From positions 1 through 64,000 of IMG/VR virus record IMGVR_UViG_3300026292_000003: a stretch of 64,000 nt of DNA. One strand, given 5' to 3'. The stretch's first letter is position 1. Every line of letters starts with the position of its first letter. The notes below the pieces were generated by a model, which saw only the letters and a program-made list of their open reading frames with translations, ran no database searches and was not told the DNA's origin. This document shows, one piece after another, positions 18,107 to 60,450 of the stretch. A program made the position numbers and the translations under genes.

Positions 18107-21100
18107 TTATAACTCTATTCCTTTACCAAAGTCTTGCAACTCTTGTGCAGTCTCTGATACAGGTGTACTCAATAATGAACTGCCTGTTTGATTATAACTT
18201 ACAGTATCATTAGCAAATGTAAGTTGATAGTTTGATATTTGAACTACAGCATCTCCAGTATCTGCTGATACTATAAATGTCTGTCCTACTGCTCTTTTCA
18301 TTATTTTTAATGTAGTAGCATCGGTTTTAGCATATTCAATTATCTCTCCACCAACATATACAAATCCTGTGTCATCAAATGCGGTTGTACTTGCTATTGC
18401 TAAATCTGTACTATCTTCATCTATTGCAGAAGTTAGTGTAGATTTTTTAGCATCAAGTAAGGCATATGCTTTCACATTGCCTGCCGCATCTTGTATATGT
18501 GTAAATGTTCTTGAAGTGTTTGCGTATGTGTTACCTGTTGCGTTTGTTTGAACATTAATACGTAACAATTCAAGTGGGTCTATATTTACAAAACTGTTTC
18601 TTTTCTCATCAGCATTAACATTAAAGTTATATGGTGATAAGAAGTTTATTGCTTCTATAGTATCTGCTGGAGTACTAGTAAAGTCTCCACCTGTTACTAT
18701 GTCTGTGCTATCTGCTCCAACATATGTAGTTCCATTAAATGTTGGAGTAAAATCTTGTGTGTTAAGTGTAATTACGTGTGTAGGCGTATCAGTTACAGTT
18801 ATAGAAGTTTCGTCAATAACTTTATAGTTAGTCTTAACTGCACTTATTTTTGTATGGAAAGGTTTAACTTCATTTATGTAGCCTATCGCATTTACTAAAT
18901 TATCTTTCTTAAATGTTCTTGAAGTAGTATCAATTTGACTATCAACTTCAATTTTAACATATGTTGTTTTTCTAATCCAATTTGTTTGAGCAAAAGAACT
19001 TAATGTATAATCAACTATACTAAAGAATAATTTGTTCATCTTTAGTTTATGATATTCTACAAATATATCTTTCTTTAATGCTTCAATAAGAACTTGCCAA
19101 TACTCAGAAACAAATGTATGATCCCAACCTTTTGAATCCCAAGGTGTCATATCAAATCCATCTGATGGACTTAATAAGTCTACATCAAAACGAACTGTAC
19201 TATTTTTCTTATGTACTAGAATCCATTTTGCAGTATCGCTATTGTAATAATAAATTTCACTTCTGTCAAGTTTTAATGCACTATCATATATAGGTAGCTG
19301 AACTACACTATGGAAATCTTTATCTATGTCAGTCTCAAGTTTATCTGTATCTGTAACTGTAGCTGTATAGTTTAATGTACCCAAGTATGTGTTTAATGTA
19401 TAGTCTTTCCAATTCCATAAGTATCTAGGAAAACTATTTGCTAATAATGTTTTATTCCAACTATCTTTGTACTCGTCGTGTAAGTTTATATCTTCTAATA
19501 ACTTATTAATTGTTATAATTGCGTTACGTCTTGCAGTAGTTAAATTATTAAACCAAGTTTGTCCAATACTTAATTCGTCACCGTACTTGTTAAATCTATG
19601 TAAAGTTTGATGTGGAATCTTTCTCAAACTCTTATCCCAACCTGCTAAATTATATTTCATTCCTTCAATATAGTATTCTGGAATAGTATCTAAGTCTTTA
19701 GTTATTAATGTCCATTCGTTATGAGATTTAAATTTATCTCCTACTAAATTAATTTGTAATACTGTACTTGTATCTTCAACATAATAACTAACATTGTCAA
19801 TAATAAAAGTTTCATTGTCTAATACTGCAAACCAACTTATTCCATTGGCTGTTGGGTTTTCAATAATGTTTGCAACATCAAATGCTGATAAAGTTCTTGT
19901 TCCGTTTATAGTAGTTTTATTTTTAACCCAGTAGTAGAATACATCAGTGTATGTACCTGTGTTAGAATTGTATTCTTGTTCTTGTGAATAATAATATAAT
20001 GTTTCTCTGGCTGTAGCGTCATATACTGAGTAAGCTTCTCCTGTTGCAGTAACACCAAACATTTCTTTTTGTGATGTAACTGATTCAGCATAATCGTCTG
20101 GAGCAACTGTAGATTTAATCCACTCCCATACTACAATTTCACTTCCTGGATATAGTTTACCCCACATATCTTTTTTATATGATATACTACCTTGATCATA
20201 ATCATAGTAACGTACTTTACTTGTATCCCACCATCTAGTTCCTACTTGTTCTTCTCCCCAAGCATTATCATCTTCAATAAAACGATTTGTGTCTGTTGAC
20301 AAGTTATATATTGCATTATCATTTACACCTGAATAATCTAAATTCTGTTCTGCGATACCTGGTATAATTTTTCTCATTGGGTCGTATGCTTCAAGTTGAA
20401 CCTTTGTTTGATTTGTTTTATGATTGTATATAATAATACTATCAACATCTGCATTTGATGGTCTTGCTATAGTTTGTCTTACAGTAGTTAATCCTACTGC
20501 GTCTGTAGTTGATACAAATGTTCCATTTATAGTACCATTGTTACTTGATACAACTAAAGTTCCTGTAGGTAAGTTCCAATGTGATTTTGTTAATGCGGAA
20601 TCTCTTTGTGTATGGTTTGCAAACCTAGTAGTTACTAATGGCATAATTGAAACTGCGTTACCACACTCTTTAATAAACTCATCTATGTAGAAAATTCTAC
20701 CTGCGTTACTTCCTGTACCTAGTTTAGTAACTTTATGTATTCCATCTATGTTAGGTGTAGTGGTTGTGTTTAATAACATAACAAAGTCACCTACTTGTAA
20801 TCCGTGATCAATATTTGTTGTTACTTCTGCATCATTACCATCACTTGTAGCTGTACCTGCACAAATTCCACAATGTGTTCCATCAACACTCTTAGAGTAT
20901 AGTGGAGAATGATTTTGAATTACTTGTAGTACATTGTATCCAAAGAATTTTGTATTAATACCTTCAACATCAGATATTTCAAAATCACTATCATCTGTAA
21001 TTAATATATTAAATGTTGCTGGATCTAAACTTGGATCAACTGGTGCACCACCGAATTGATTTATATCAAATGTATTTTGTACAGTTCCTTCAGCGGCCTC

Positions 21101-24100
21101 AAGTGTTCCTGTAGCAATACCTGCTATTGAGTTAAAGTCTGTATTACCAAGTGTTAATGATTGTCCTGTAGATGTTATTTTAATTCTGTTTGCATCTGCT
21201 GTAATTGTTACTTCAGTATTGTTTGCAGATGTTAATGCAGATTGTATTTGACTAATAGCTGAATTCATTCTAGTAGTTACATTTACACTACTTGTTGTTG
21301 CTGTATAAGACTCATTTAATCCAACTGTAGTTCTAGCAGTACCTGCAACTGACATTGTTGTGTTAGTACTTGTTAGTTTTAATTGACTATTCTCATCTGA
21401 AGCTGTTACTGAAAATAAGTTTGAAGTATCATTAATTTGAGAAACTATATCAGATAAGTTTAATGCAACAGATTGTTGTTGTACTTCTGTAGGAGGTGCA
21501 GTAACTTTTCCACTTGCTGGAAATCCTAAATCAGTATTAGTAGCACCTGCGGACAATGTTAATGTTTCATTAGGATCTGTTGTTGTAAATGTAAGTTCTA
21601 ATAAGTTTGCAGTAGTAACTATACTTGCTGTTAATCCTGTAATACTTGCATTATTAATTGCGTTCATAATTTCAGTAGTCGTCATTTGATCTGGAATATG
21701 TGTTAGTGTTATTGCTACTGCGGCATTCTGCGTTGGTTGTGCATTAAGAGTTAATACTTGACCATTAATAGTCCAACCAGTTTCAAGTACACCGTCTATA
21801 GTTACACTTGCAACACTATAAGTACTATTTGATAATGCTTGTGATATTGTATAAGCTGTCTTAATGAGAGGTTGATGAGTCAGTGTAATATCAACTGCCT
21901 CACCACCTGTCATTGTTGGATTGTTAATTGTAACAACCTGTCCATTCAGAACATAGTCTGAAGTTGGTACGATGGTACTGTCTACTTCCACTTTAAGAAC
22001 ACTCCAGGTACTCGGACTTAAACTTTGATTAATTGTAAAATCTGTTTGACTTGCTGTAGCTGTATTAGTTTCTGTTATATCAGCTGGTGCAATATTATCT
22101 GCGTTAAATGATTCAGTTACGTCTGCTGGTGTAATATCAAAATTAATTAATGTACCATTAACTGTAATTTGTTTACCAGTTACATCTGCAAAACTAGCAT
22201 TACCAGAAGTAGCTCTCATAACTGCATCACCAGTAACTACTGTAACGTTCTGTGATTTACTAAATCCAATACTTACACCATCAATAATTAATGTCTCACT
22301 TGGTAAGAATGTTGGACTTACTACAGTACCTACTGCTTCTATATCTTGATATTCTGTTGCTGTATCATTAAATGTAACTGTAGTACCTGCAATGTTTGCA
22401 ACTGTTCCATTAGGAAATACTGGGTTAGTTACTGTACCAATCTCTTCTATGTTGGCGGCAACTTCCGTAAGTCCTGTAAAGTTAACACTACATTTCCATA
22501 ACTGTCCTTCATGTCTTACTAGGTCATCTTTCTTATAACTTGTAGTAGAATTCCACGTAGGAATTGTTGCGTATGATTCTGTAGAATCAAAAACATTTAT
22601 TTCAGATGAATTTGATATATAATATTTTGTTTCTGTTGTTAATGTTTCTCCACCAGTTAATATTTCTGATGATGAATCGTCATAGCTTAATGTTTCAAAT
22701 GTTGTTGCTACGTCATTTATAATCTTTTTTGTATCAACTTGAGATAAGTCAATAGATAAAGGTAAGTTTATAATATCACTTGATACTATTTCCATCTCAA
22801 ATGGTTCTTGTAAATTATCATTACCTAATGTTGATTGTCTGAACATATATTGTTCAAATGCTGATAGGCTTGTTGTTCCTCCATCGAGTATAGTTGATCT
22901 ACCAAATCTTTCAATCGCACCTTTGGTACCTTTTTGTTTAATAACACCTTGATGAAAGTTTGTAATAGTATTTTTGTTTAGTCCTAATCCACTTACCCAA
23001 TCTTTATCAATGTTACCTATAGTTAAATCTTTTGATTTAGTAATTGCTGAATTAAATTCATCTACATCAGTTCTATAAATGTCATCAACGGCTTGAACTG
23101 CACTATCAAAGTTTTCAACAATATGATCACCGAACACCAAGTAACCTGGTGCATTCTTTTCACCATTCCATTCTTGTGTACGTTGACCTCTTATTAATAA
23201 TCTTTGTTGTCTTTTATTTTTAACATCGTCATATAAGTCAACACCTAATGCTGTTTTATTTTCAAATATTAATGCGTGTTCAAAATTTGTAGTAGCACTA
23301 GTAATACTTCCAATAAATGCTTGTTCTTTAGTTTCAATAGATACTGTTCCATCTTGTCTGTTTATACTTAAATCGCTATGCTGAATCTTATTACTATACA
23401 TATCAAGTATATTATTGTTATTGTAAATTAATGTGTTATAAGGATATACATATCCACTAGGTGGTGTATACGAAACTCTTCTTCCTATTTGTAATATGTA
23501 AGTATCTTTTTCTTCAGCAGTATTTGTCCAATTAACAAAGTCAGCGGCATTTTGGTCGCCTGCAAATTGTAATGTGTATCCTTTGCTTTCTAAATAGTTC
23601 CAGTAGCCTCTGATGAAATTATACACGTCTTGTATCTTAGAAACTTTAGTATCAAATTCTAATGTGCTAGGTGTTGTTACAAATTTATTATATCTTCTTA
23701 CAGTAGCATTATTAATCGTTTGTAATTCATAGTCATTGCCACCGTTACCTAAATTAGGTTCAAAGAATTTAAATTCTCTTTTATTATCTGATACACCAGA
23801 TACTTTATATGCATCTGCAGTTTTAGTAATAAGTAAAATAGATGCATTAACAAAACTATTAGACTGTCCTTCATACATTGATATATTATAATCACTGCTA
23901 CCAAGTTCAAAGTCACCGTAGTAACTAGTTTCTCCAAATATACTTAAAAGATGTTGACTACTATATCCTTCAAGTTTTTGTAATAGTTTTGTTGTTAAAT
24001 TTTTATATAATTCTTTTTGGTTATTATCTAACTGTTTTCTTTTAAAGTAATTGTGTTGTGCTTGTGATATTCCGTTAGCTACAAATGAAACTTCTTTTAA

Positions 24101-27100
24101 AGATAATTCAATACCAGGTGCTACACTTAAACTAGTACTATAAGAAAGAATTGGTATACCAGTAAAGTGTTTACCTCTGTCTACCATACTCATTGCTGAT
24201 ATTTTTGTAGCTGTTGTTTTAAATCTTGCTGTACCTATTGTACTTTGATTATCGTCTAGTATATAAAACTCTTCTGAGTCTACTAGGTTTGAACTAGTAG
24301 ATACTTTTATTTCATTAACAACTTTATAAGTTTCACCAGGCATAGTAAAACAAGAACTGTTTATATATTTCTTATCATATGATGAAGCATAGTCTCTAAC
24401 TTTTCCTGGTTGGAAATAATCTGACCAAGCTCTAGCTGGATTTAATTTCAACATAGCATTAACAGTCATAGCTTGACCTAATGCAGATTGTCTCCATTCA
24501 ATCTCTACAGGACCCCAATCACCAAACACAAAGTCTTGAGATGCATCAACATTTGTTGGCGTACCTAAAACATTATGTGGACTTTCTAACTGTCCATTAG
24601 GTTTTACAGGACAATTATTTGTAAAGTCCCAATTACGTCTTGCGTATTTTATATCTTGTTTTTTATTTGGATATGCTTGTGGTGCAACTGTACCTACGTT
24701 TAACGCACCTATTAGTGCCGCACGTTTTGTAGCATCTGTCCAACTATAATACGTATCCCACCAAGTAGGTTTAAACGCATAGCCTAGCATATGCCAAGGT
24801 GTTAAGTGTGGCGTAGCAGTACCAAACAACGTCATGTATGCACCTTTATAATGTCCTGGCAGTTTGTTAGTACCAAACTTACCTCCAACACTTAATGAGC
24901 TATAATTCCAAGTAAATGTATCGTTAACATCATAATAGTTTTCAGTATTAAATGATGTCTTTTTATTTTGTATAGCCCACTTCTCATAAAACTTTTCTAA
25001 ATAATTATCAACGGTTGCTAAATCATACCAAGCACTTATATGATGACTTGGCATATAATCAGTAGGAGTTTTATATTTGTCTTTTATAATGCTATCATCT
25101 CTGTACATTAAATCTTGTGTAACTAGTCCAGCATATATTCTTTTTTCTAAATCAAACAATGCCGCGTGTACAGGATCAAAGTTAGCACCACTTACGTTTG
25201 TAATCTGTCCGTTAATTGTATAAGTAGAACCATCGTGTGTATATAATGTTGATCCAACTACTTGAGGTTGCATACCAAAAGCTAGTCCAAGTTTAACCAT
25301 ACTCTGTGGAACAAAGCATTCACTATCCATTTGATTGTAAACTACTTTAAGTATTGGACTTGTATTTAAATTATCAAGTGATGCGTATGTAAGTTTTAAA
25401 TATATAGTATCACCTATAAAATCATAATCAGTATCTTTTAATAATATTCTTTCTACTTGGTTATTGTTACCATCGTTTTCAGTTAGATATACATACAAGT
25501 GATCTCTAATATTTTGATCACCGTGCATATTAAATTTTGTTTTAAAATCATATATTGTAATATTTGATATAGTAAATGTTTCAGTATCATAGCTGTTACT
25601 ATAAACCATATTAGAATCAATATAAAGTTCTGAATCTTTTTTATTTCTAATAACTTCATTAATTGCTGATTCAGTTAAAAGTTTTATACTAGAATTATTT
25701 GCTCCTACTGAATATAATCTTTTAGCCTGTGCTAAAAATCTTTTTCTAAAAGCATACCATTCGTTAGCTTGTTCGTTAAGTGTTGCAGTTATATTTAAAT
25801 TTGTATCTGAGTAGTTTATATCATGCATTATACTAATGTCAGGGTGTATAAACATAGTACCACCATAGTATGGAGTATGTACAATACTAGCATAATTATT
25901 TTCACCAAACATAGTTCCAGAGTAACCTGGATTGACTACAAGTTTATCTAACCAATGATCAATAGTTTCACTCATAGTAAATGTTTTAATACATTCATTA
26001 TTAGCATTATGTTCTAATGTTTCTGGAAAACTAATATTTGTTGTTGGATTAGTTTTATCATTGCTCACCCAGTTAAAGTCAACTAGGTCACCTTTTGTGA
26101 AAGCACTCTCATCTATTACAGTACTTGTAGCACCAACAGTTACTAATGAGTTAGAAACTTTGTTGCCATTTATTGTTACGTCATAAAATAATCTATCCCA
26201 ATTCTCTGAGATTGACATTGAAGCCATTTCATTTGCGTCTGCAAATATACTAAAGTTATCACCGTCACTGTTTGCTCCTGTTACTATTGTAATTTCTGTT
26301 CCGTTTCTAGTAATGGTTATAGCAGGTATTGGATTAGAGCCTGGATTTTCAATATCAACTTGCCCAACTTTAAATGTAATTGTGTAACCTGTTAAGTTAT
26401 TAATTTTAATTGTTTGGTTAACACCTAATAAATGTCTAGTGTTTTTATGTGATTCATTGTAAGTACCGTTGTTGTTACACTTGGCTAATACAAGCATATT
26501 ACCTTTAACTATTACATTATATTCTTCAACTGGTCTCCAATTATCAGTACCAACTGGTATAGTCAATGGCGTATCAGCAATAGTAATCTCATATTGCTTT
26601 TCTTCTCTAGCACTTGTTAATTCTCCCGACGGTCTGTAAAATGTATGTAAGTTATTTTTAATTTTAATATGGTTATAACCTTCTACCATTTTTGAATAAC
26701 TTTGATCTCTAACTGCGTCGTCGTAACTCTTTTTATATTCTTTAGTTAATAAATAATTTTCAAATTCATATTCAGCACCCTTTGGTGTATCTTTGTAACT
26801 TAATATATGTCCAATTTCTGGATCAACAAAAGTACCTGTTCCAACTTTATATCCAAAAATCTTTTCTCCAGCAAATCCTGTGCCGAGGATAGTTTCTAAA
26901 GGAACGCCATAGTAATCATAAAATCTATACAATGGATATTGATTGGTTTTTATTTTTTGTTGAGCTAATGTAATTGTACTATTTGTATAATAAACATCTG
27001 CATAGTTCCAATCTGCGTAAGCTGTACTTGCTACAGATTCAATATTCATTGTATCGTTTTCAGCTAAAGTTTTTACTACTGTAGGTGTTGTTGAAGTTTT

Positions 27101-28606
27101 CTTATAAACTTTAGTATCACTATTATCAACATAAACATAAGTAGATCCTATTGGAAAGTCAGTTAAACTTTCTCCACTAACTACACCATAGTTAACTTTT
27201 CCTATACTGTTTGGAGTAATATGTTTTGCGTGATTCCATAAATCTAATCCAGTATCATATTCTATAATAGGCCTTTGTGCTATTCTATATTCTTTTAAAA
27301 TTTCTGTAAAATCATATGTAGGAATTAGTTCTTCTACTTTATTAATTGTAGCAAAGTTAACCCATCTGTTTCCTCTACTCCAAGCTGTTTGAAATACGTC
27401 TGCTCTGTCAATAACAATGTAATCTTTTTTAGGATAAGGAACACTACCGTGATCCCATTTGTCATTGTCATCATATTGATCTAGTGCATTAATAAGAGCA
27501 AGTTCATCAGCAGTAATACCTGCAACGTTTGCTAGTGTATATACTCCACCACTAAACGTTGCTTCTACTAATTTTTTAATTGAAACATCACCTGTGGTTG
27601 CATCTACTTGAGTAATGTATATAGATTCATTGTCGCCTTGATTTGTATGTATCCAATCACTATTAAACTTTATTAAAGTTCCTGATAAAAACTGTGTAGG
27701 GTTAGACTTAATACCATTAAATTTAAAACCATCAAATATAGGTAATCTATTTGTATCAGCATTGTAAGCATCAATTACTAATTGAGGTGAGAGGTTTCCA
27801 GCATTGTAATAAGTATTATCTATATTTGGAGATACTCTTACTACTTCACTTTTATCCCAAGTACCAGGATTATCTGATGAATGTTTAACAACATTTCCAT
27901 ATACCTTAACACCATTTTCATCTTTATATAATTCTAATTTTGTTTCTGGGTTGGTTGCTGTTACTAGATAAGTTTTATTTTCTATTTCTGCCGCCCAACC
28001 TGTTCCACTAAATTTTATAAGCATTCCAACTTGTAATACAAAAGAATTATTATCGTCAGTTAGTTTATATGCTGGTATACTTTGCATTTCAATTAATGGA
28101 TTTGATGCAACATTTCCATTGTTATTATATGTAGTAACATACTTACTTTCATATACTGGCATCTCTTCTACCCATCTATAGTTTTTGTAGTTTAAAAATT
28201 TATCAACATTAATAGGTGGACTAAAAGTATGTTTACTTGATGAATACGAAGCATTGTAATTATAAGTTTCAAAGTTTTGATTTATTGAATATGCTATATC
28301 ATCAAATGCAATTTTATTAGTTAATTCGTTATTATCTGAATAAGATACAATAGCAGGTTTTAATTGAGTTTTATTTCTAAGGTTAGTATCAATACTAGGA
28401 GTTACATAAGTATCACTTGATACTGAATGCTTTCCATTTTTACTTCCTACGTAACCATTAACTTGGCCTAGAGGTCCTTTAGAAACCATTTGGTCAAGAG
28501 TACTATCTAGCCAACTCTTATTAATGTTTGTTTGAAAAACATTAGGTAAGAAATTACTAGTTTTAATCTTGTTTACCTTATTTGGGCCTGCTTTCTTTTT
28601 AGCCAT
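18107..28606 (-). CDS. giant baseplate wedge/structural protein (3499 aa)
   Basis: Follows gp6; YINEVKPFHTKI wedge motif; WNSTTSYKKDDLVRHEGQLWKC carbohydrate-binding-like module; T/N-rich beta modules. Confidence 0.75.
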   Translation of the reverse strand: MAKKKAGPNKVNKIKTSNFLPNVFQTNINKSWLDSTLDQMVSKGPLGQVNGYVGSKNGKHSVSSDTYVTPSIDTNLRNKTQLKPAIVSYSDNNELTNKIAFDDIAYSINQNFETYNYNASYSSSKHTFSPPINVDKFLNYKNYRWVEEMPVYESKYVTTYNNNGNVASNPLIEMQSIPAYKLTDDNNSFVLQVGMLIKFSGTGWAAEIENKTYLVTATNPETKLELYKDENGVKVYGNVVKHSSDNPGTWDKSEVVRVSPNIDNTYYNAGNLSPQLVIDAYNADTNRLPIFDGFKFNGIKSNPTQFLSGTLIKFNSDWIHTNQGDNESIYITQVDATTGDVSIKKLVEATFSGGVYTLANVAGITADELALINALDQYDDNDKWDHGSVPYPKKDYIVIDRADVFQTAWSRGNRWVNFATINKVEELIPTYDFTEILKEYRIAQRPIIEYDTGLDLWNHAKHITPNSIGKVNYGVVSGESLTDFPIGSTYVYVDNSDTKVYKKTSTTPTVVKTLAENDTMNIESVASTAYADWNYADVYYTNSTITLAQQKIKTNQYPLYRFYDYYGVPLETILGTGFAGEKIFGYKVGTGTFVDPEIGHILSYKDTPKGAEYEFENYLLTKEYKKSYDDAVRDQSYSKMVEGYNHIKIKNNLHTFYRPSGELTSAREEKQYEITIADTPLTIPVGTDNWRPVEEYNVIVKGNMLVLAKCNNNGTYNESHKNTRHLLGVNQTIKINNLTGYTITFKVGQVDIENPGSNPIPAITITRNGTEITIVTGANSDGDNFSIFADANEMASMSISENWDRLFYDVTINGNKVSNSLVTVGATSTVIDESAFTKGDLVDFNWVSNDKTNPTTNISFPETLEHNANNECIKTFTMSETIDHWLDKLVVNPGYSGTMFGENNYASIVHTPYYGGTMFIHPDISIMHDINYSDTNLNITATLNEQANEWYAFRKRFLAQAKRLYSVGANNSSIKLLTESAINEVIRNKKDSELYIDSNMVYSNSYDTETFTISNITIYDFKTKFNMHGDQNIRDHLYVYLTENDGNNNQVERILLKDTDYDFIGDTIYLKLTYASLDNLNTSPILKVVYNQMDSECFVPQSMVKLGLAFGMQPQVVGSTLYTHDGSTYTINGQITNVSGANFDPVHAALFDLEKRIYAGLVTQDLMYRDDSIIKDKYKTPTDYMPSHHISAWYDLATVDNYLEKFYEKWAIQNKKTSFNTENYYDVNDTFTWNYSSLSVGGKFGTNKLPGHYKGAYMTLFGTATPHLTPWHMLGYAFKPTWWDTYYSWTDATKRAALIGALNVGTVAPQAYPNKKQDIKYARRNWDFTNNCPVKPNGQLESPHNVLGTPTNVDASQDFVFGDWGPVEIEWRQSALGQAMTVNAMLKLNPARAWSDYFQPGKVRDYASSYDKKYINSSCFTMPGETYKVVNEIKVSTSSNLVDSEEFYILDDNQSTIGTARFKTTATKISAMSMVDRGKHFTGIPILSYSTSLSVAPGIELSLKEVSFVANGISQAQHNYFKRKQLDNNQKELYKNLTTKLLQKLEGYSSQHLLSIFGETSYYGDFELGSSDYNISMYEGQSNSFVNASILLITKTADAYKVSGVSDNKREFKFFEPNLGNGGNDYELQTINNATVRRYNKFVTTPSTLEFDTKVSKIQDVYNFIRGYWNYLESKGYTLQFAGDQNAADFVNWTNTAEEKDTYILQIGRRVSYTPPSGYVYPYNTLIYNNNNILDMYSNKIQHSDLSINRQDGTVSIETKEQAFIGSITSATTNFEHALIFENKTALGVDLYDDVKNKRQQRLLIRGQRTQEWNGEKNAPGYLVFGDHIVENFDSAVQAVDDIYRTDVDEFNSAITKSKDLTIGNIDKDWVSGLGLNKNTITNFHQGVIKQKGTKGAIERFGRSTILDGGTTSLSAFEQYMFRQSTLGNDNLQEPFEMEIVSSDIINLPLSIDLSQVDTKKIINDVATTFETLSYDDSSSEILTGGETLTTETKYYISNSSEINVFDSTESYATIPTWNSTTSYKKDDLVRHEGQLWKCSVNFTGLTEVAANIEEIGTVTNPVFPNGTVANIAGTTVTFNDTATEYQDIEAVGTVVSPTFLPSETLIIDGVSIGFSKSQNVTVVTGDAVMRATSGNASFADVTGKQITVNGTLINFDITPADVTESFNADNIAPADITETNTATASQTDFTINQSLSPSTWSVLKVEVDSTIVPTSDYVLNGQVVTINNPTMTGGEAVDITLTHQPLIKTAYTISQALSNSTYSVASVTIDGVLETGWTINGQVLTLNAQPTQNAAVAITLTHIPDQMTTTEIMNAINNASITGLTASIVTTANLLELTFTTTDPNETLTLSAGATNTDLGFPASGKVTAPPTEVQQQSVALNLSDIVSQINDTSNLFSVTASDENSQLKLTSTNTTMSVAGTARTTVGLNESYTATTSSVNVTTRMNSAISQIQSALTSANNTEVTITADANRIKITSTGQSLTLGNTDFNSIAGIATGTLEAAEGTVQNTFDINQFGGAPVDPSLDPATFNILITDDSDFEISDVEGINTKFFGYNVLQVIQNHSPLYSKSVDGTHCGICAGTATSDGNDAEVTTNIDHGLQVGDFVMLLNTTTTPNIDGIHKVTKLGTGSNAGRIFYIDEFIKECGNAVSIMPLVTTRFANHTQRDSALTKSHWNLPTGTLVVSSNNGTINGTFVSTTDAVGLTTVRQTIARPSNADVDSIIIYNHKTNQTKVQLEAYDPMRKIIPGIAEQNLDYSGVNDNAIYNLSTDTNRFIEDDNAWGEEQVGTRWWDTSKVRYYDYDQGSISYKKDMWGKLYPGSEIVVWEWIKSTVAPDDYAESVTSQKEMFGVTATGEAYSVYDATARETLYYYSQEQEYNSNTGTYTDVFYYWVKNKTTINGTRTLSAFDVANIIENPTANGISWFAVLDNETFIIDNVSYYVEDTSTVLQINLVGDKFKSHNEWTLITKDLDTIPEYYIEGMKYNLAGWDKSLRKIPHQTLHRFNKYGDELSIGQTWFNNLTTARRNAIITINKLLEDINLHDEYKDSWNKTLLANSFPRYLWNWKDYTLNTYLGTLNYTATVTDTDKLETDIDKDFHSVVQLPIYDSALKLDRSEIYYYNSDTAKWILVHKKNSTVRFDVDLLSPSDGFDMTPWDSKGWDHTFVSEYWQVLIEALKKDIFVEYHKLKMNKLFFSIVDYTLSSFAQTNWIRKTTYVKIEVDSQIDTTSRTFKKDNLVNAIGYINEVKPFHTKISAVKTNYKVIDETSITVTDTPTHVITLNTQDFTPTFNGTTYVGADSTDIVTGGDFTSTPADTIEAINFLSPYNFNVNADEKRNSFVNIDPLELLRINVQTNATGNTYANTSRTFTHIQDAAGNVKAYALLDAKKSTLTSAIDEDSTDLAIASTTAFDDTGFVYVGGEIIEYAKTDATTLKIMKRAVGQTFIVSADTGDAVVQISNYQLTFANDTVSYNQTGSSLLSTPVSETAQELQDFGKGIEL

Positions 28607-56950: not shown

Positions 56951-57025
56951 ATCAGCTTGGTGCTAATGGTAACATAGCGGTCTCCAAAACCGAAGACGAG
57001 GGTTCGATTCCTTCAGCTGGTGCCA
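56951..57025 (+). tRNA. trnW: tRNA-Trp (anticodon CCA)
   Basis: Acceptor ATCAGCT/AGCTGGT, anticodon loop CTCCAAA, GGTTCGATTCC T arm, encoded CCA end. Confidence 0.92.
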
Positions 57026-57246: not shown

Positions 57247-58152
57247 ATGTTTAGAGGAAAATACACACAAACACACAGTCATTTCTATATGCTTTCCGAT
57301 ACTCACAGAGTAAACGGATTTATTAATGCAATTAGAGAAAGAGTTTGTGTTGGCGATATTGTTGTTGATTTAGGTGCAGGTACAGGTATACTAGGTATTG
57401 AATGTGCTAAAGCAGGTGCAGATACAGTACATTTAGTAGAACAAGAACCTAAACTAATTCCAGTAATAGAAGCAATGATAAAAGAACACGGTGTTGAAGA
57501 ACAATGTGTTATACATAATAAAAGATCAGATGAATTTATAAAAGAGTTTAAGGGGCAAGTTAATCTAATAGTTTGTGAAGGTATTGGAGATCATATATTT
57601 GAAAGCAGACTAATAAAAGATTTTTTAGAATTCAAAGATAAACACAACATAGATAGTATTCCAGAAGATTTTAGACTTTACGTACATCATACACCTGTAA
57701 AAATAAACAGAGAATTACTTGGCAAGTATCATACAGTACTAGACAAGTTAGAAAAACCAACACTAGATTCTGTTAATATAACAAATAATATTATACATGA
57801 TAGGTTATACAAGTTTGGAAATAAAATAACTGAAGCAAAATGTATTTTAGAGTTTAATTCATTAGATCAACTTAAAACACGTTGTGAACAGATTTCATTA
57901 AACAGAATGCCAGATGATGATGAATATTTAATTCTATATTTTGAAATTGACTTAATAGATAAAATAAATATTAGTAATAAACCTACAAGAGAAGATTTAC
58001 CACATAGCTATTACCAAAGATTAATTAGCTGTAAAGATATAAGATCTCAGAATATACAAATAAAAATTGATTATGAAAAACACGTTACAGGAATCGAAGA
58101 CGAGCCCTTTCCAAATATAGAGATAAAACCAAGCAATGTCCAAATTTTATAA
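57247..58152 (+). CDS. SAM-dependent methyltransferase, protein-arginine methyltransferase (PRMT)-like
   Basis: HxxMLxDxxR; VVDLGAGTGILG..AKAGA..V..VE; double-E loop CEGIGDHIFES. Confidence 0.75.
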   Translation: MFRGKYTQTHSHFYMLSDTHRVNGFINAIRERVCVGDIVVDLGAGTGILGIECAKAGADTVHLVEQEPKLIPVIEAMIKEHGVEEQCVIHNKRSDEFIKEFKGQVNLIVCEGIGDHIFESRLIKDFLEFKDKHNIDSIPEDFRLYVHHTPVKINRELLGKYHTVLDKLEKPTLDSVNITNNIIHDRLYKFGNKITEAKCILEFNSLDQLKTRCEQISLNRMPDDDEYLILYFEIDLIDKINISNKPTREDLPHSYYQRLISCKDIRSQNIQIKIDYEKHVTGIEDEPFPNIEIKPSNVQIL

Positions 58153-59116
58153 CGAAGATTTATACGAGTCAATAGAACATCCAGACTTTTTTAATGCAGA
58201 ACAATTACTCTTTATTAAAAATGGTTATAAAAGTTTATATAACGATGTAATAAAAGATATAGAATATAACGATGATACTGAGTATGTAAGAATTGAAGAA
58301 GCGAACTTTACAAGATCACCAATTAATAAAAGATTAAATTGGGGACAAATTGGAGCATCGGTTCGTGATAAAGAATCGCATGATAGCAAAAGATTTAAAC
58401 AATTATCTTTTCAAAGAAACAAACCAGGCTTTGAGTTTGTTGACAACTTAAATGAATGGACTAGTACCATTGTTAGTATAATGGAAAAAAGATTTGAAGA
58501 AATAGGAAGACCTGCAAAAGTTATGGATATTGCATTTCATAATTTTAGTCAAGGTTTACGAATACATTGTGATGGACAAGATATTTTAACTGAACTAAAA
58601 AATTCAGTTCCAAGACCAGCACATCATCCAAATTATGCAATAGAAGAATATGCACCAAAAGAAGGTGGAACAAAACACGCCCATCAAGGATTAGTTAATT
58701 TAGATGCACAACCAGGAAAAGCAACAATTATTTTTGATCAATGGTTTCCATACAGTACATATTATGATATTACAAATGATTTAGATAATTTAGATGAAGC
58801 AAAAAGACCAGTTATAACATTTGCCAAAGGTGATGATTTTGAAATGTTTGGTGAGCATATAAGAGAGCTAACAGGTAAACCTTTTAACAGGCGTACTTGG
58901 ATGCAACTAATCGCACCAGAATTTCATTTACAATTTCCACCAGAAATGTTTCATGGATTGACACTTAATAAAGTATTAGATTTTGGGGAACCAGGACAAT
59001 TAATATCTTGGGATAATAAACGATACCATATGGCAAAACCTTTTATGTTATGGGGAAACCATGGTATAGGACAAGAAGATAGACTAATGTTACAATACGA
59101 AAGTTTATGTTTGTAG
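58136..59116 (+). CDS. 2OG-Fe(II) oxygenase-like protein
   Basis: IHCD (HxD) ... GQLISWD..RYH ... DRLML (distal His and Arg). Confidence 0.6.
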   Translation: MSKFYNEDLYESIEHPDFFNAEQLLFIKNGYKSLYNDVIKDIEYNDDTEYVRIEEANFTRSPINKRLNWGQIGASVRDKESHDSKRFKQLSFQRNKPGFEFVDNLNEWTSTIVSIMEKRFEEIGRPAKVMDIAFHNFSQGLRIHCDGQDILTELKNSVPRPAHHPNYAIEEYAPKEGGTKHAHQGLVNLDAQPGKATIIFDQWFPYSTYYDITNDLDNLDEAKRPVITFAKGDDFEMFGEHIRELTGKPFNRRTWMQLIAPEFHLQFPPEMFHGLTLNKVLDFGEPGQLISWDNKRYHMAKPFMLWGNHGIGQEDRLMLQYESLCL

Positions 59117-59152
59117 TTAAATAAGGTAAATAATTTAGTAAATAATAGTACA

Positions 59153-59204
59153 ATCGTTCATCCTGTAGATTTCGGACGGAAGTAAGCGAAAGCTGAAGGA
59201 ACGC
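59153..59204 (+). ncRNA. glutamine riboswitch (glnA motif) aptamer 1
   Basis: AUCGUUCA-UCC..GGA-CGGAAGUA-AGC GAAA GCU-GAAGGAACGC matches the glnA three-way junction with E-loop. Confidence 0.85.
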
Positions 59205-59210
59205 ATTATC

Positions 59211-59259
59211 ATCGTTCATCTCGTAAGAGACGGAAGTAGGTAATGAACCGAAGGAACGC
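59211..59259 (+). ncRNA. glutamine riboswitch (glnA motif) aptamer 2
   Basis: AUCGUUCA-UCUC GUAA GAGA-CGGAAGUA-GGU..ACC-GAAGGAACGC. Confidence 0.85.
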
Positions 59260-59284
59260 ACTTAACTGTAAAAAGGAGAGTGTC

Positions 59285-59437
59285 ATGAATCACAGAGACT
59301 TTGAAATCGCTCGTAAAAAGAAGCGAACTGAAGAGGCACACAAAGCAATACATAGAAAGCAAATGGAAAGACCGCTATCTAGACCTCGTGCTGAGAAGAA
59401 CATCTTAAGCTCAGACCCTAAAATGCAAAAAATCTAA
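59285..59437 (+). CDS. small basic protein (50 aa) downstream of the tandem glutamine riboswitch
   Basis: AAGGAGAG RBS and ATG 59285; MNHRDFEIARKKKRTEEAHKAIHRKQMERPLSRPRAEKNILSSDPKMQKI. Confidence 0.75.
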   Translation: MNHRDFEIARKKKRTEEAHKAIHRKQMERPLSRPRAEKNILSSDPKMQKI

Positions 59438-59456
59438 TATTTTTGGTAAAAAAAGG

Positions 59457-59485
59457 TTGACCTTTAGGTAAAGTTAGTATATATT
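59457..59485 (+). promoter_or_regulatory. sigma70 promoter for the ncRNA
   Basis: TTGACC-17nt-TATATT. Confidence 0.7.
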
Positions 59486-59490
59486 ATAGA

Positions 59491-59708
59491 TAATACCAAC
59501 AGCGGATTGATCATCCAATGTTAATAGTGCAAGGAAGAGGCGTTTACCAGAGCGTCGAACTTGACTGTAAAGAGGTGGTACTCAGGCATGGTTGCAGAAA
59601 TGCGTTGTGTCACATCGCTCTACCGAGCGGTTGCAGGTTCCCTGGGTTAGAAATGGTATCTAGTCGAGGGGTTGAGGGTGTACCCAAGTCCCTCCTATTT
59701 TGGTATTA
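59491..59708 (+). ncRNA. ~220-nt structured ncRNA, manA-motif-like
   Basis: Promoter, paired ends TAATACCAA/TTGGTATTA, internal stems and terminator; GTGCAAGGAA..AGAGGTGGTRCTC..CTCTACC blocks recall the marine phage manA RNA (from memory). Confidence 0.65.
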
Positions 59709-59713
59709 GTATT

Positions 59714-59741
59714 AAAACCCACATTAATTGTGGGTTTTTTT
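59714..59741 (+). terminator. intrinsic terminator
   Basis: AAAACCCACA-TTAAT-TGTGGGTTTTTTT. Confidence 0.85.
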
Positions 59742-59844
59742 ATGGCCATACGTTAAAACGCAATCTAACATAGCAAAATGCATAAATACATATATAATTT
59801 TAACTAATTAAAATATGGAAGTAGAAAAATAGGAACAGTATATT

Positions 59845-60450
59845 ATGTCATCACATATTAATCCAGACGCAGGGCGTCTAATTATAGAAAGTACACAAAA
59901 TCTAGACTTGACTGCAAGTCAAGCTAATATGCCTACAGGCGCATCTTTGTATAACAAAGGTGGAATGTTTAATGCTGGGCACCTGTACGTTCAAGGGACC
60001 CTTGTTGTTAATGGTGATATTATTACTTTAGGTAACAGTGGTGGGTCACTTACCTTGAACAGTAATATTAGTAGTGATGTATTACCAGATACAACTTCAG
60101 GTATTCAATACAACATTGGTAGTACAACCAAACCTTGGAATATTGGGTATTTTGAAAAAATAGTATCAAGTCAGAATCCAGCAACAGCAACAACAGATGT
60201 ACCATCAACAAAAGGAACAGTTCTTTTAGATGGTTCAACAAATACATCTTTAGCACTAGCCAATGGAACTGTAGGTGAACGTAAAACAATTATAGTCACA
60301 GCAACTCCATCAGGTACAATCACAGTTACTCCAGCAACAGCATTAGGATATACTAGTATATCATTTGCGGCCGTTGGCGATACTACTGAATTAGTTTACA
60401 CATCAAACGGCTGGTCTATTCTATCTATCTTCCGTGCAAACGTTACGTAA
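59845..60450 (+). CDS. virion structural/fibre-associated protein
   Basis: T/S/G-rich beta protein; late promoter CATAAATA at about 59781. Confidence 0.65.
   Translation: MSSHINPDAGRLIIESTQNLDLTASQANMPTGASLYNKGGMFNAGHLYVQGTLVVNGDIITLGNSGGSLTLNSNISSDVLPDTTSGIQYNIGSTTKPWNIGYFEKIVSSQNPATATTDVPSTKGTVLLDGSTNTSLALANGTVGERKTIIVTATPSGTITVTPATALGYTSISFAAVGDTTELVYTSNGWSILSIFRANVT

What the first reader, a model, noticed from the sequence alone, without database searches (positions are those of the whole stretch)
59139..59437. Phage-encoded tandem glutamine (glnA) riboswitch controlling a 50-aa basic peptide: a nitrogen-sensing switch in a virus
Seen: two near-identical aptamers (59153-59204, 59211-59259) share AUCGUUCA...CGGAAGUA...GAAGGAACGC, while their P2 and P3 stems differ in sequence but still pair. 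They follow a TAAATA late-type promoter. Just after aptamer 2, GCACUU (59258-63) can pair with GAGUGU (59278-83), masking the AAGGAGAG RBS and overlapping the 3' end of the aptamer, which predicts a translational ON switch with ligand. Known: glnA-motif RNAs bind L-glutamine, often occur in tandem, and in cyanobacteria switch on gifB, a small basic glutamine synthetase inactivating factor. Inference: the phage reads host nitrogen status and expresses an unrecognised small K/R-rich effector, possibly acting on glutamine synthetase or on infection timing.
Basis: partly seen in the sequence, partly recalled or inferred. Interest (0 to 1): 0.8.

Follow-up and report, generated by a model that had tools for sequence, protein, structure and literature searches.

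The report
Phage tandem glutamine riboswitch plus microprotein
A marine phage carries two genuine glutamine-sensing RNA switches in front of a conserved 50-residue basic protein of unknown function; the switch type is already known from phages, but what it controls had been overlooked.

Summary
Rfam's glutamine riboswitch model (RF01739) hits 59153-59207 (61.4 bits) and 59211-59262 (65.7 bits), against a cut-off of 35. A TAAATA late-promoter box lies 10 nt upstream. An AAGGAG ribosome site and a 50-codon ORF (59285-59437) follow.

The proposed masking helix (59258-63 with 59278-83) covaries across related viral leaders. It contains the C that pairs inside the aptamer when glutamine binds, as in the published gifB model. 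A translational ON switch is therefore the best reading.

The ORF is real. It has the same length in 35 protein clusters, changes mostly at third codon positions, has homologues in four Pelagibacter phages, and is covered by metatranscriptome contigs while the flanking genes are not. It is not a DUF4278/IF17 relative, and its target is unknown.

Phage glutamine riboswitches, tandem copies and ON control of small basic proteins are all published, so this is a new member of a known kind. Three points may be new:
- Viral copies precede several microprotein families.
- The Melnitz "riboswitch-controlled tmRNA" reading looks wrong.
- Aptamer 1's tail is complementary to aptamer 2's P3, which suggests a relay.

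The parts
59118..59144 (+). Three TAAATA boxes just after the stop of the upstream ORF (59116). The proximal one (59139-59144, context AGTAAATA) is the likely T4-type late promoter.
   Evidence: Sequence. In 108 of 165 distinct related upstream regions a TAAATA box ends 4-14 nt before the first aptamer's CGTTCA, against 0.9% of background 16-nt windows. TATAAATA and CTAAATA are the dominant forms.
59153..59207 (+). Glutamine riboswitch aptamer 1. P1 is 59155-59/59199-203; P3 is 59185-87/59192-94.
   Evidence: RF01739, 61.4 bits against a cut-off of 35. P1 and P3 pairs are conserved or covary in 79 tandem leaders.
59204..59210 (+). 3' tail of aptamer 1 (CAUUAUC), starting with the C that follows P1. 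Proposed relay strand.
   Evidence: Complementary over 7 bp to 59239-59245. The helix is in the MFE and centroid folds. 81% of cells are paired, with UA/CG and AU/GC/GU covariation. Inference, not shown experimentally.
59211..59262 (+). Glutamine riboswitch aptamer 2. P1 is 59213-17/59254-58; P2 is 59219-22/59227-30; P3 is 59239-41/59247-49.
   Evidence: RF01739, 65.7 bits. All these pairs are 86-100% paired in 79 tandem leaders.
59239..59245 (+). 5' strand and loop of aptamer 2's P3 (GGUAAUG). Proposed target of aptamer 1's tail.
   Evidence: Nucleotide 3 of this segment covaries both with its P3 partner (UA 63, CG 15) and with the tail of aptamer 1 (AU 41, GC 15, GU 6).
59258..59283 (+). Expression platform: helix GCACUU (59258-63) with GAGUGU (59278-83), closing a 14-nt loop that holds most of the Shine-Dalgarno sequence.
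   Evidence: Present in the MFE and centroid folds. 91% paired with UA 39/CG 32/AU 8 and CG 35/UA 6 covariation. Among 126 unique leaders there are many covarying helix types; mean helix length is 5.5 bp, against 4.2 bp with shuffled partners (maximum 4.4 in 200 shuffles).
59273..59278 (+). Shine-Dalgarno sequence AAGGAG, 6 nt before the start codon.
   Evidence: Sequence. The same SD-spacer-ATG layout occurs in the relatives.
59285..59437 (+). ORF for a 50-aa basic microprotein ('family A'): an N-terminal helix plus a conserved C-terminal tail (SRPRAEKNILSxDP+xQKI).
   Evidence: 35 homologous clusters, almost all 50-51 aa. Profile search finds 48 small-protein relatives and none annotated. 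Codon-position differences are 393/312/637 and the other frames are closed. All 9 ORF differences in metatranscriptome contig X4 rec7 are at third positions. AF2 gives a helix over residues 3-28 and an extended tail.
59714..59741 (+). Hairpin plus T-run. First intrinsic-terminator-like site downstream of the ORF, and the probable 3' end of the late transcript (inferred).
   Evidence: Sequence. A hairpin plus T-run at the same place in four related loci has a different stem sequence in three of them. RNA-library contigs bridge the ORF and the manA-like RNA, and coverage stops at about 59758.

Best explanation
Transcription unit. This is an autonomous late transcription unit of a large T4-related marine phage. 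A TAAATA-type late promoter (59139-44) starts an mRNA whose 5' UTR consists of two class-I glutamine aptamers (59153-59207 and 59211-59262).

Switch (inferred from covariation, from folding and from the published gifB model). Without glutamine, the C that follows P1 of aptamer 2 (C59259) and its neighbours pair with 59278-83. That locks the 3' end of the Shine-Dalgarno sequence and the spacer into a hairpin and blocks 30S entry. Glutamine binding draws that C into the aptamer's long-range pair and the 6-bp helix melts. The 50-aa ORF (59285-59437) is then translated, so this is a translational ON switch.

Relay (inferred, less certain). Aptamer 1 uses the same trick on a different target. Its tail CAUUAUC (59204-10) pairs with GGUAAUG (59239-45) and unfolds P3 of aptamer 2. 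Aptamer 2 would then become competent only after aptamer 1 has bound glutamine. This gives a two-step, steeper response.

Product. The product is a conserved microprotein with a basic helix and an invariant, probably unstructured, C-terminal docking motif. It is made late in infection only when host glutamine is high. Its target is unknown. My best guess is a host protein of nitrogen assimilation such as glutamine synthetase, by analogy with IF17 (about 30%). A role in lysis timing is the main alternative.
For: - Aptamer identity: two RF01739 hits at almost twice the gathering score.
- Phage and late context: portal, major head and baseplate genes in the window; the late-promoter box is positionally conserved in 108 of 165 related upstream regions; terminators directly precede the promoter in L019 and L091.
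- Mask helix: in the MFE and centroid folds; 91% paired with compensatory changes in 79 leaders; many covarying types among 126 unique leaders and beyond all shuffled-partner controls. Cyanobacterial leaders show the analogous GCGCCUC...GAGGCG helix, as described in PMC6212724.
- Relay helix: with three-way covariation of P3b nucleotide 3. OFF is -20.1 and ON is -15.3 kcal/mol.
- ORF. Homologues occur in Pelagibacter phages, with a single glutamine aptamer upstream in Mosig.
- RNA evidence: contigs from four metatranscriptomes cover 59149-59758 and almost none of the flanking genes.
Against: - No ligand-binding or reporter data exist for this RNA.
- The mask helix pairs only one nucleotide of GGAG here; most of the Shine-Dalgarno sequence lies in the hairpin loop.
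- The mask helix shares only G59258 with P1, so exclusivity rests on the published linchpin-C model rather than on strand competition.
- The relay helix is absent or at most 3 bp in several tandem classes (linkers CCGAAC, CCACAUU, CAUUGUAAAA) and in cellular amt/glnA tandems.
- The sequences are related, so shuffle controls overstate significance.
- The metatranscriptome evidence is assembled contigs, not reads, and flank absence could partly reflect strain divergence.
- Nothing ties the peptide to glutamine synthetase: no Pfam, PHROG, NCBIfam or PDB hit, and no similarity to DUF4278.
Confidence: 0.75

Rival explanations
1. The two aptamers act independently ('pseudo-cooperative' tandem, as tandem glutamine riboswitches are classed in PMC9481103). 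The tail-1/P3b complementarity would then be a lineage-specific accident, and only aptamer 2 gates the ribosome site.
For: The relay helix is missing or at most 3 bp in several tandem classes and in cellular amt/glnA tandems. In the CAUCUU class, tail 1 simply duplicates tail 2's anti-SD sequence. Covariation rests on few independent events among related sequences.
Against: There is 7-bp complementarity in the window's class, with compensatory variants (UAUUAUC/GGUAAUA, CAUUGUU/GGCAAUG, CAUUACU/GGUAAUG). It is in the MFE and centroid folds. Mean helix length is 5.5 bp, against 2.6 bp with the aptamer's own P3a and 4.4 bp with shuffled partners. With a 6-nt linker, aptamer 1 has no other visible expression platform.
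Confidence: 0.4
2. The peptide is a lysis-timing factor rather than a nitrogen-metabolism effector. Rising glutamine late in infection would signal that synthesis is finished, and the peptide would act on the holin/spanin system.
For: In podovirus HTVC023P the homologue (gp47) lies directly upstream of a 119-aa protein with an N-terminal membrane segment and coiled coil, followed by an M15 endolysin. HTVC104P has the same peptide followed by a membrane/coiled-coil protein. Buchholz et al. speculated on glutamine-timed lysis (PMC9004378).
Against: In the window, and in L011, L019, L186 and Mosig, the gene is not next to lysis genes; it lies in a structural/ncRNA region. The peptide has no membrane segment. 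The podovirus copies lack a riboswitch. Synteny in two related podoviruses is weak evidence.
Confidence: 0.2
3. The small ORF is mainly a translation-dependent relay for downstream RNA. Glutamine-dependent translation would protect or extend the late transcript into the manA-like RNA, and the peptide itself would be incidental.
For: The order riboswitch, peptide A, manA RNA is conserved in L011, L019 and L186. No terminator lies between the ORF and the manA-like RNA. RNA-library contigs bridge the two.
Against: The peptide sequence, especially its C-terminal motif, is under purifying selection. It occurs without a riboswitch or manA in podoviruses and apart from manA in Mosig. The manA-like RNA has its own invariant sigma-70-type promoter.
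Confidence: 0.08
4. The element is an OFF switch or acts on transcription rather than on translation initiation.
For: Cellular tandems upstream of amt and glnA have long, different leaders and are plausibly OFF switches, so the class can work either way.
Against: There is no terminator-like hairpin plus U-run between the aptamer and the ATG; only 25 nt separate P1 from the ATG. The conserved alternative helix sequesters the ribosome-site region using the nucleotide that ligand binding captures (PMC6212724). The only experimentally tested members are ON switches (PMC6212724).
Confidence: 0.05

Closest known systems
Type 1 glutamine riboswitch of the gifB (IF17) 5' UTR, Synechocystis sp. PCC 6803 (Klahn et al. 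2018, PMC6212724; Rfam RF01739)
   Same: Same aptamer class. It sits in the 5' UTR of a small basic protein. The C after P1 and the following nucleotides pair with the ribosome-site region. An ON switch is postulated and was shown by reporter in Synechocystis.
   Different: The window has two aptamers instead of one. It uses a phage late promoter instead of an NtcA-regulated one. The mask helix is GCACUU/GAGUGU rather than GCGCCUC/GAGGCG. The product is unrelated to DUF4278/IF17. The host is probably a marine heterotroph, not a cyanobacterium.
Glutamine riboswitches of Melnitz-like and pelagimyophages (Buchholz et al. 2022, PMC9004378)
   Same: Same RNA class in related marine T4-like phages. 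The Melnitz leader has the same GCACUUAAC...GGAGAGUGU-AUG platform. Mosig carries one aptamer in front of a family A homologue.
   Different: Those authors read the riboswitch as controlling the tmRNA. In Melnitz the aptamer lies 3' of ssrA and directly 5' of an unannotated 32-codon ORF. The window has no tmRNA, a tandem instead of a single aptamer, and a different peptide family from Melnitz.
Tandem glutamine riboswitches (Weinberg 2010, PMC2864571; Sherlock et al. 2022, PMC9481103: 157 doublets, 4 triplets, classed as pseudo-cooperative with multiple expression platforms)
   Same: Two RF01739 aptamers head to tail.
   Different: Here the linker is 6 nt and aptamer 1 has no ribosome site or terminator of its own. 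Its tail is complementary to P3 of aptamer 2, so aptamer 2 may itself be the expression platform of aptamer 1. This architecture is not described in the papers I could read.
Tandem glycine riboswitch
   Same: Two like aptamers and one expression platform.
   Different: Glycine aptamers communicate through tertiary contacts. Here the proposed communication is a mutually exclusive secondary-structure helix. No evidence for tertiary contacts was sought or found.

Membership tests
Glutamine riboswitch, class I (glnA RNA, RF01739) | Covariance-model score at or above the curated gathering score, full-length match | tested here: met
   61.4 and 65.7 bits against 35; model positions 1-53 of 53 for both.
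Glutamine riboswitch, class I (glnA RNA, RF01739) | Three-stem junction (P1, P2, P3) with conserved junction blocks CGGAAGUA and GAAGGAAC | tested here: met
   Both blocks are exact in both aptamers. The native helices are 96.6% paired with compensatory changes across 79 tandem relatives.
Glutamine riboswitch, class I (glnA RNA, RF01739) | Conserved C immediately 3' of P1 that forms the ligand-dependent long-range pair (Ren 2015, as cited in PMC6212724) | tested here: met
   C59204 and C59259 are present. The aptamer-2 C is invariant in 79 of 79 relatives. Its long-range pairing itself was not testable.
Glutamine riboswitch, class I (glnA RNA, RF01739) | Selective binding of L-glutamine with structural change | not testable with these tools
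   Needs in-line probing, ITC or NMR.
Translational ON riboswitch | Conserved alternative helix that sequesters the ribosome-site region and is incompatible with the ligand-bound fold | tested here: met
   The helix 59258-63/59278-83 is in the MFE and covaries. Incompatibility rests on the published linchpin-C model; only one nucleotide is shared with P1.
GS-inactivating factors IF7/IF17 (DUF4278, PF14105) | Match to PF14105, or profile similarity to DUF4278 peptides (YRG motifs) | tested here: not met
   No Pfam family at E<=1. hhalign of the family A profile against the viral DUF4278-type profile gives probability 0.1%, while 13 of 14 of those viral peptides do match PF14105.
GS-inactivating factors IF7/IF17 (function) | Binds and inactivates glutamine synthetase | not testable with these tools
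   Needs a GS activity assay or pull-down. No complex modelling is available here.
T4-type late promoter | TATAAATA-like box about 6-10 nt upstream of the transcript start, in a late gene region | tested here: inconclusive
   The window has AGTAAATA (6 of 8) with correct spacing. The position is conserved in 65% of related loci, mostly as TATAAATA or CTAAATA. No 5'-end mapping is available; the contigs give no start site.
Cooperative tandem riboswitch | Ligand binding at one aptamer changes the affinity or competence of the other | tested here: inconclusive
   Comparative and thermodynamic support exists for a tail-1/P3b helix. It is absent in other tandem classes. There are no binding data.

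The most novel reading that the evidence does not exclude
Marine phages of streamlined heterotrophs (SAR11-type hosts) and of cyanobacteria may use glutamine riboswitches as a general late-infection nitrogen gauge. In this reading the riboswitches switch on a set of at least six unrelated microprotein families, of which only one (DUF4278/IF17-like) has a known cellular counterpart. In the window's class the two aptamers would be wired in series: aptamer 1's tail disables P3 of aptamer 2 until glutamine binds. That is a riboswitch whose expression platform is another riboswitch, giving a digital response without tertiary cooperativity.
Probability: 0.35. Interest if true: 0.7.

Novelty: new member of a known kind. 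Interest (0 to 1): 0.5.

Why it matters
Glutamine is the cell's main read-out of nitrogen status, and nitrogen limits both hosts and phage production in the surface ocean. Phage-borne glutamine riboswitches have been recorded but not explained, and in Melnitz the riboswitch was assigned to the tmRNA. They lie directly in front of short conserved ORFs and carry a covarying ribosome-site mask.

This gives a concrete, testable target list: family A in the culturable Mosig/HTCC1062 system and family C in Melnitz/OM43. With it one can ask what a phage does differently when its host is nitrogen-replete. SAR11-type genomes use the same aptamer on amt and glnA, so phage and host read the same signal. 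The possible aptamer-to-aptamer relay would add a simple design principle for steep riboswitch responses.

Tried and rejected
- Megablast of the region against 50,697 phage records found nothing. Only blastn at low stringency found Mosig (manA part) and Melnitz (aptamer).
- The peptide found no named relative in Pfam, PHROGs, NCBIfam, PDB sequence profiles, the ESM Atlas or a 1.84-billion-protein HMM search. The longer hits were frameshift or adapter artefacts.
- hhalign of family A against family B and against the DUF4278-type family showed no relation. I had suspected A-B homology from a shared 'SR..NI' stretch and dropped it.
- AF2 gave only a helix plus tail, so I did not run a fold search; a single helix would give meaningless matches.
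I removed those rows and did not resend them.
- Ames & Breaker 2011 (tandem binding data) is not in the library.
- I considered that the aptamer 1 tail might act as a second anti-SD strand. In the window that pairing is only 5 bp with two wobbles, against 7 bp with P3b. It does fit the CAUCUU class.
- I considered control of a tmRNA as in the Melnitz paper. No tmRNA is present.
- The overall fold z-score of 59150-59300 is unremarkable (-0.98). The argument therefore rests on covariation, not on stability.

Full report

Yes. A gathering-threshold cmscan of the whole window gave three hits. Two are full-length matches to RF01739 (glutamine riboswitch aptamer) at 59153-59207 (61.4 bits, E 4e-11) and 59211-59262 (65.7 bits, E 2.6e-12), with a curated cut-off of 35 bits. 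The third hit is a tRNA.

Three TAAATA boxes lie between the stop of the upstream ORF (59116) and the first aptamer; the proximal one is at 59139-44. AAGGAG (59273-78) and ATG 59285 open a 50-codon ORF that ends at 59437. GCACUU (59258-63) and GAGUGU (59278-83) are complementary and form a hairpin in both the MFE and the centroid fold.

**2. Genomic setting**

The window is phage DNA from a structural/late module. It encodes a portal protein, a T4-type major head protein, a baseplate hub and a tail lysozyme-like protein. The head protein is 65-70% identical to those of jumbo T4-related phages such as Phosso, PA5oct and Vibrio 2.275.O. A near-identical leader lies on a 221,643-bp IMG/VR contig (L179).

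No cultured phage matches the region at megablast level. At low stringency the aptamer matches Methylophilales phage Melnitz, and the RNA downstream of the ORF matches Pelagibacter phage Mosig.

**3. How common is this in viruses, and what follows the aptamer?**

A scan for two aptamers in tandem also stopped at 120.

In nearly all loci the last aptamer is followed within 17-36 nt by a Shine-Dalgarno sequence, a start codon and a short ORF of 18-81 codons. The ORFs fall into several families:
- **A:** the window's family, about 50 aa, with the C-terminal motif SRPRAEKNILSxDPRLQKI.
- **B:** 63-65 aa with NGNGTSGY.
- **C:** about 30 aa with W..YCR or WC[YF]. This family includes an unannotated 32-codon ORF in Melnitz.
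- **D:** YRG repeats. 13 of 14 members match Pfam DUF4278, the IF17 family.
- **E:** MKTKNNWQL...
- **F:** MTKY...LPxYIxxNPFYP.

A TAAATA box ends 4-14 nt upstream of the first aptamer in 108 of 165 distinct upstream regions, against 0.9% of background 16-nt windows. It occurs mostly as TATAAATA or CTAAATA. In L019 and L091 an intrinsic terminator immediately precedes the promoter. The riboswitch plus microprotein is therefore a self-contained late unit.

**4. The expression platform**

Among 126 unique leaders, the nucleotides right after P1 pair with the stretch just before the start codon. The combinations covary: GCACUU/GAGUGU, GCACCU/GGGUGU, GCACUUU/GAAGUGU, CACUC/GAGUG, GCAUCU/GGAUGU, GCAUCUC/GAGAUGU, CAAUCUUC/GGAGAUUG, GCGCCU/AGGUGC and CAUUUUCC/GGAGAAUG. 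Mean helix length is 5.5 bp, against 4.2 bp with shuffled partners (maximum 4.4 in 200 shuffles).

On a MAFFT alignment of 79 distinct tandem leaders the helix is 91% paired. One pair shows UA 39/CG 32/AU 8 and another CG 35/UA 6. Sliding the partner by 1-3 columns drops pairing (both proposed helices counted together) from 86% to 30-53%.

Cyanobacterial leaders from the genome scan show the analogous GCGCCUC...GAGGCG helix in front of DUF4278 genes. Klahn et al. (PMC6212724) proposed exactly this: the C after P1 and its neighbours pair with the ribosome site, and glutamine binding melts the helix because that C is captured in the aptamer's long-range pair. The ON behaviour was shown by reporter for gifB. 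By inference, the window's element is the same kind of translational ON switch.

Two caveats apply. In the window only the last G of GGAG and the spacer are paired, whereas in some relatives all of GGAG is paired. The helix also shares only one nucleotide with P1.

**5. The tandem: a possible relay**

The linker between the aptamers is 6 nt. Aptamer 1 therefore has no ribosome site or terminator of its own. Its tail CAUUAUC (59204-10) starts with the equivalent C and is complementary over 7 bp to GGUAAUG (59239-45), which is the 5' strand and loop of aptamer 2's P3. This helix is in the MFE and centroid folds.

Comparative support:
- Among the 57 distinct tandem combinations (27 distinct tail/P3b pairs), compensatory variants occur: UAUUAUC/GGUAAUA, CAUUGUU/GGCAAUG, CAUUACU/GGUAAUG, and shorter CAUC/GGUG and UACU/GGUA forms.
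- Mean helix length is 5.5 bp, against 2.6 bp with the aptamer's own P3a and 4.4 bp with shuffled partners (maximum 4.8 in 500 shuffles).
- On the alignment the helix is 81% paired, with UA 53/CG 15 and AU 41/GC 15/GU 6.
- The third nucleotide of P3b covaries with both of its alternative partners, which is the signature expected of a switching segment.

Secondary-structure energies give -20.1 kcal/mol for OFF (relay plus mask) and -15.3 kcal/mol for ON (both aptamers native). A gap of that size is plausibly paid by ligand and tertiary contacts.

Against the relay:
- Several tandem classes lack the helix.
- In the CAUCUU class, tail 1 instead duplicates the anti-SD sequence of tail 2.
- Cellular amt/glnA tandems have long linkers and no such helix.

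I rate the relay at about even odds. The published view is simply 'pseudo-cooperative' (PMC9481103).

**6. The ORF is a gene**

- Thirty-five 90%-identity clusters were found, almost all exactly 50-51 aa and all 'hypothetical'.
- A profile search of 1.84 billion representatives found only 48 relatives, and all genuine ones are small.
- Eight distinct 50-codon genes differ at codon positions 1/2/3 in the ratio 393/312/637, and they carry 2-8 stops in the other frames.
- Homologues occur in four Pelagibacter phages. In Mosig (myovirus) one glutamine aptamer lies upstream. In HTVC023P, HTVC104P and HTVC103P (podoviruses), no riboswitch was found in the two I scanned (HTVC023P and HTVC104P; HTVC103P was not scanned).
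- Contigs from four marine metatranscriptomes cover 59149-59758, with next to nothing on the flanks (nothing over 58600-59148; depth under 3 in one run over 59759-59941). All nine differences within the ORF in one 429-nt contig are at third codon positions.
- AF2 with the family alignment predicts a confident helix over residues 3-28 and an extended, lower-confidence tail that holds the most conserved motif. That suggests a docking peptide.

**7. What does the peptide do?**

This is unknown. It is not a DUF4278/IF17 relative.

Two leads exist:
- **Analogy.** The same riboswitch drives IF17 in cyanobacteria and DUF4278 peptides on other viral contigs. SAR11-type genomes put the same aptamers in front of amt and glnA. 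A nitrogen-assimilation target is therefore reasonable.
- **Synteny.** In HTVC023P the homologue directly precedes a protein with a membrane anchor and coiled coil, followed by an M15 endolysin. HTVC104P is similar. This fits the lysis-timing idea floated in PMC9004378.

Neither lead is strong.

**8. Comparison with the literature**

- Glutamine riboswitches are recorded in T4-like cyanophages (PMC9602691, PMC9964418) and in Melnitz, Mosig and pelagimyophage MAVGs (PMC9004378).
- Tandems have been noted since 2010 (PMC2864571) and were counted at 157 doublets (PMC9481103).
- ON control of a small basic protein is established for gifB (PMC6212724).
- The finding is therefore a new member of a known kind.
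- The Melnitz paper states that the tmRNA is 'controlled by' the riboswitch. In the Melnitz record the aptamer (L001 2499-2547) lies 3' of ssrA. It is followed by the same platform and a 32-codon ORF (2570-2665), while a 34-codon CDS is annotated on the opposite strand. The downstream microprotein is the more likely regulated gene.
- I found no paper in the searchable library describing these viral microprotein families.

**9. Verdict**

- It is unsupported on any tie to gifB or glutamine synthetase, and it overstates the novelty.
- Interest is moderate.

Noticed in passing
window 59457-59741: A manA-like RNA (RF01745, 49.3 bits, below the 55.2 cut-off, E 2e-11; 59505-59704) is flanked by a sigma-70-type promoter (TTGACC-17-TATATT, 59457-85) and a hairpin plus T-run (59714-41). 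The promoter hexamers are invariant in four related loci, and the hairpin keeps its place while its stem sequence differs in three of them. This looks like a stand-alone small RNA gene, whereas the manA motif is usually described as a 5' UTR element. It has the highest depth of the region in metatranscriptome contigs (up to 821).
   Followed up: partly
L011 4319-4966 (-), L019 3972-4623 (+), L186 86-810 (-): The order glutamine riboswitch, peptide A ORF, manA RNA, freshwater-2 RNA (RF02980, 59-76 bits) is conserved in these loci. The freshwater-2 element follows a GATAAATA late-promoter-like box and precedes an SD and ATG. The window lacks freshwater-2.
   Followed up: partly
L001 (Melnitz MZ577097) 2499-2694: The Melnitz glutamine aptamer lies 3' of the annotated tmRNA. 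It is followed by an unannotated 32-codon ORF on the + strand (2570-2665), while MelnitzEXVC044M_89 is annotated on the opposite strand over the same DNA. This is probably a mis-annotation, and it undercuts the published 'riboswitch-controlled tmRNA'.
   Followed up: partly
L239, L263, L301, L307, L322, L329, L351; L246, L300, L338: Cellular tandem glutamine aptamers lie upstream of ammonium transporter (427-428 aa) and glutamine-synthetase-like (476 aa) genes. The genomes are marine alphaproteobacterial SAGs/MAGs, including a Pelagibacteraceae MAG and SAR116. One locus has four aptamer cores (L322) and one has three (L302). Tail 1 there is GCAUGC, and a GCAUG element recurs downstream of aptamer 2.
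   Followed up: partly
L229 (HTVC023P) 1501-2631; L231 (HTVC104P) 1250-2012: In two Pelagibacter podoviruses the peptide A homologue has no riboswitch. It sits immediately upstream of a roughly 120-aa protein with an N-terminal membrane segment and coiled coil, and in HTVC023P an M15 endolysin follows. The layout looks like a possible lysis cassette.
   Followed up: partly
window 56951-57025: tRNA-Trp (CCA) lies between the head genes and a SAM-methyltransferase-like ORF at 57247-58152.
   Followed up: no
window 18107-28606 (-): A single 3,499-codon ORF lies in the tail/baseplate region. It was not examined.
   Followed up: no
L022, L023, L108: Some riboswitch-controlled viral peptides end in a cysteine-rich stretch (for example CACRCCC), which suggests metal binding.
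   Followed up: no
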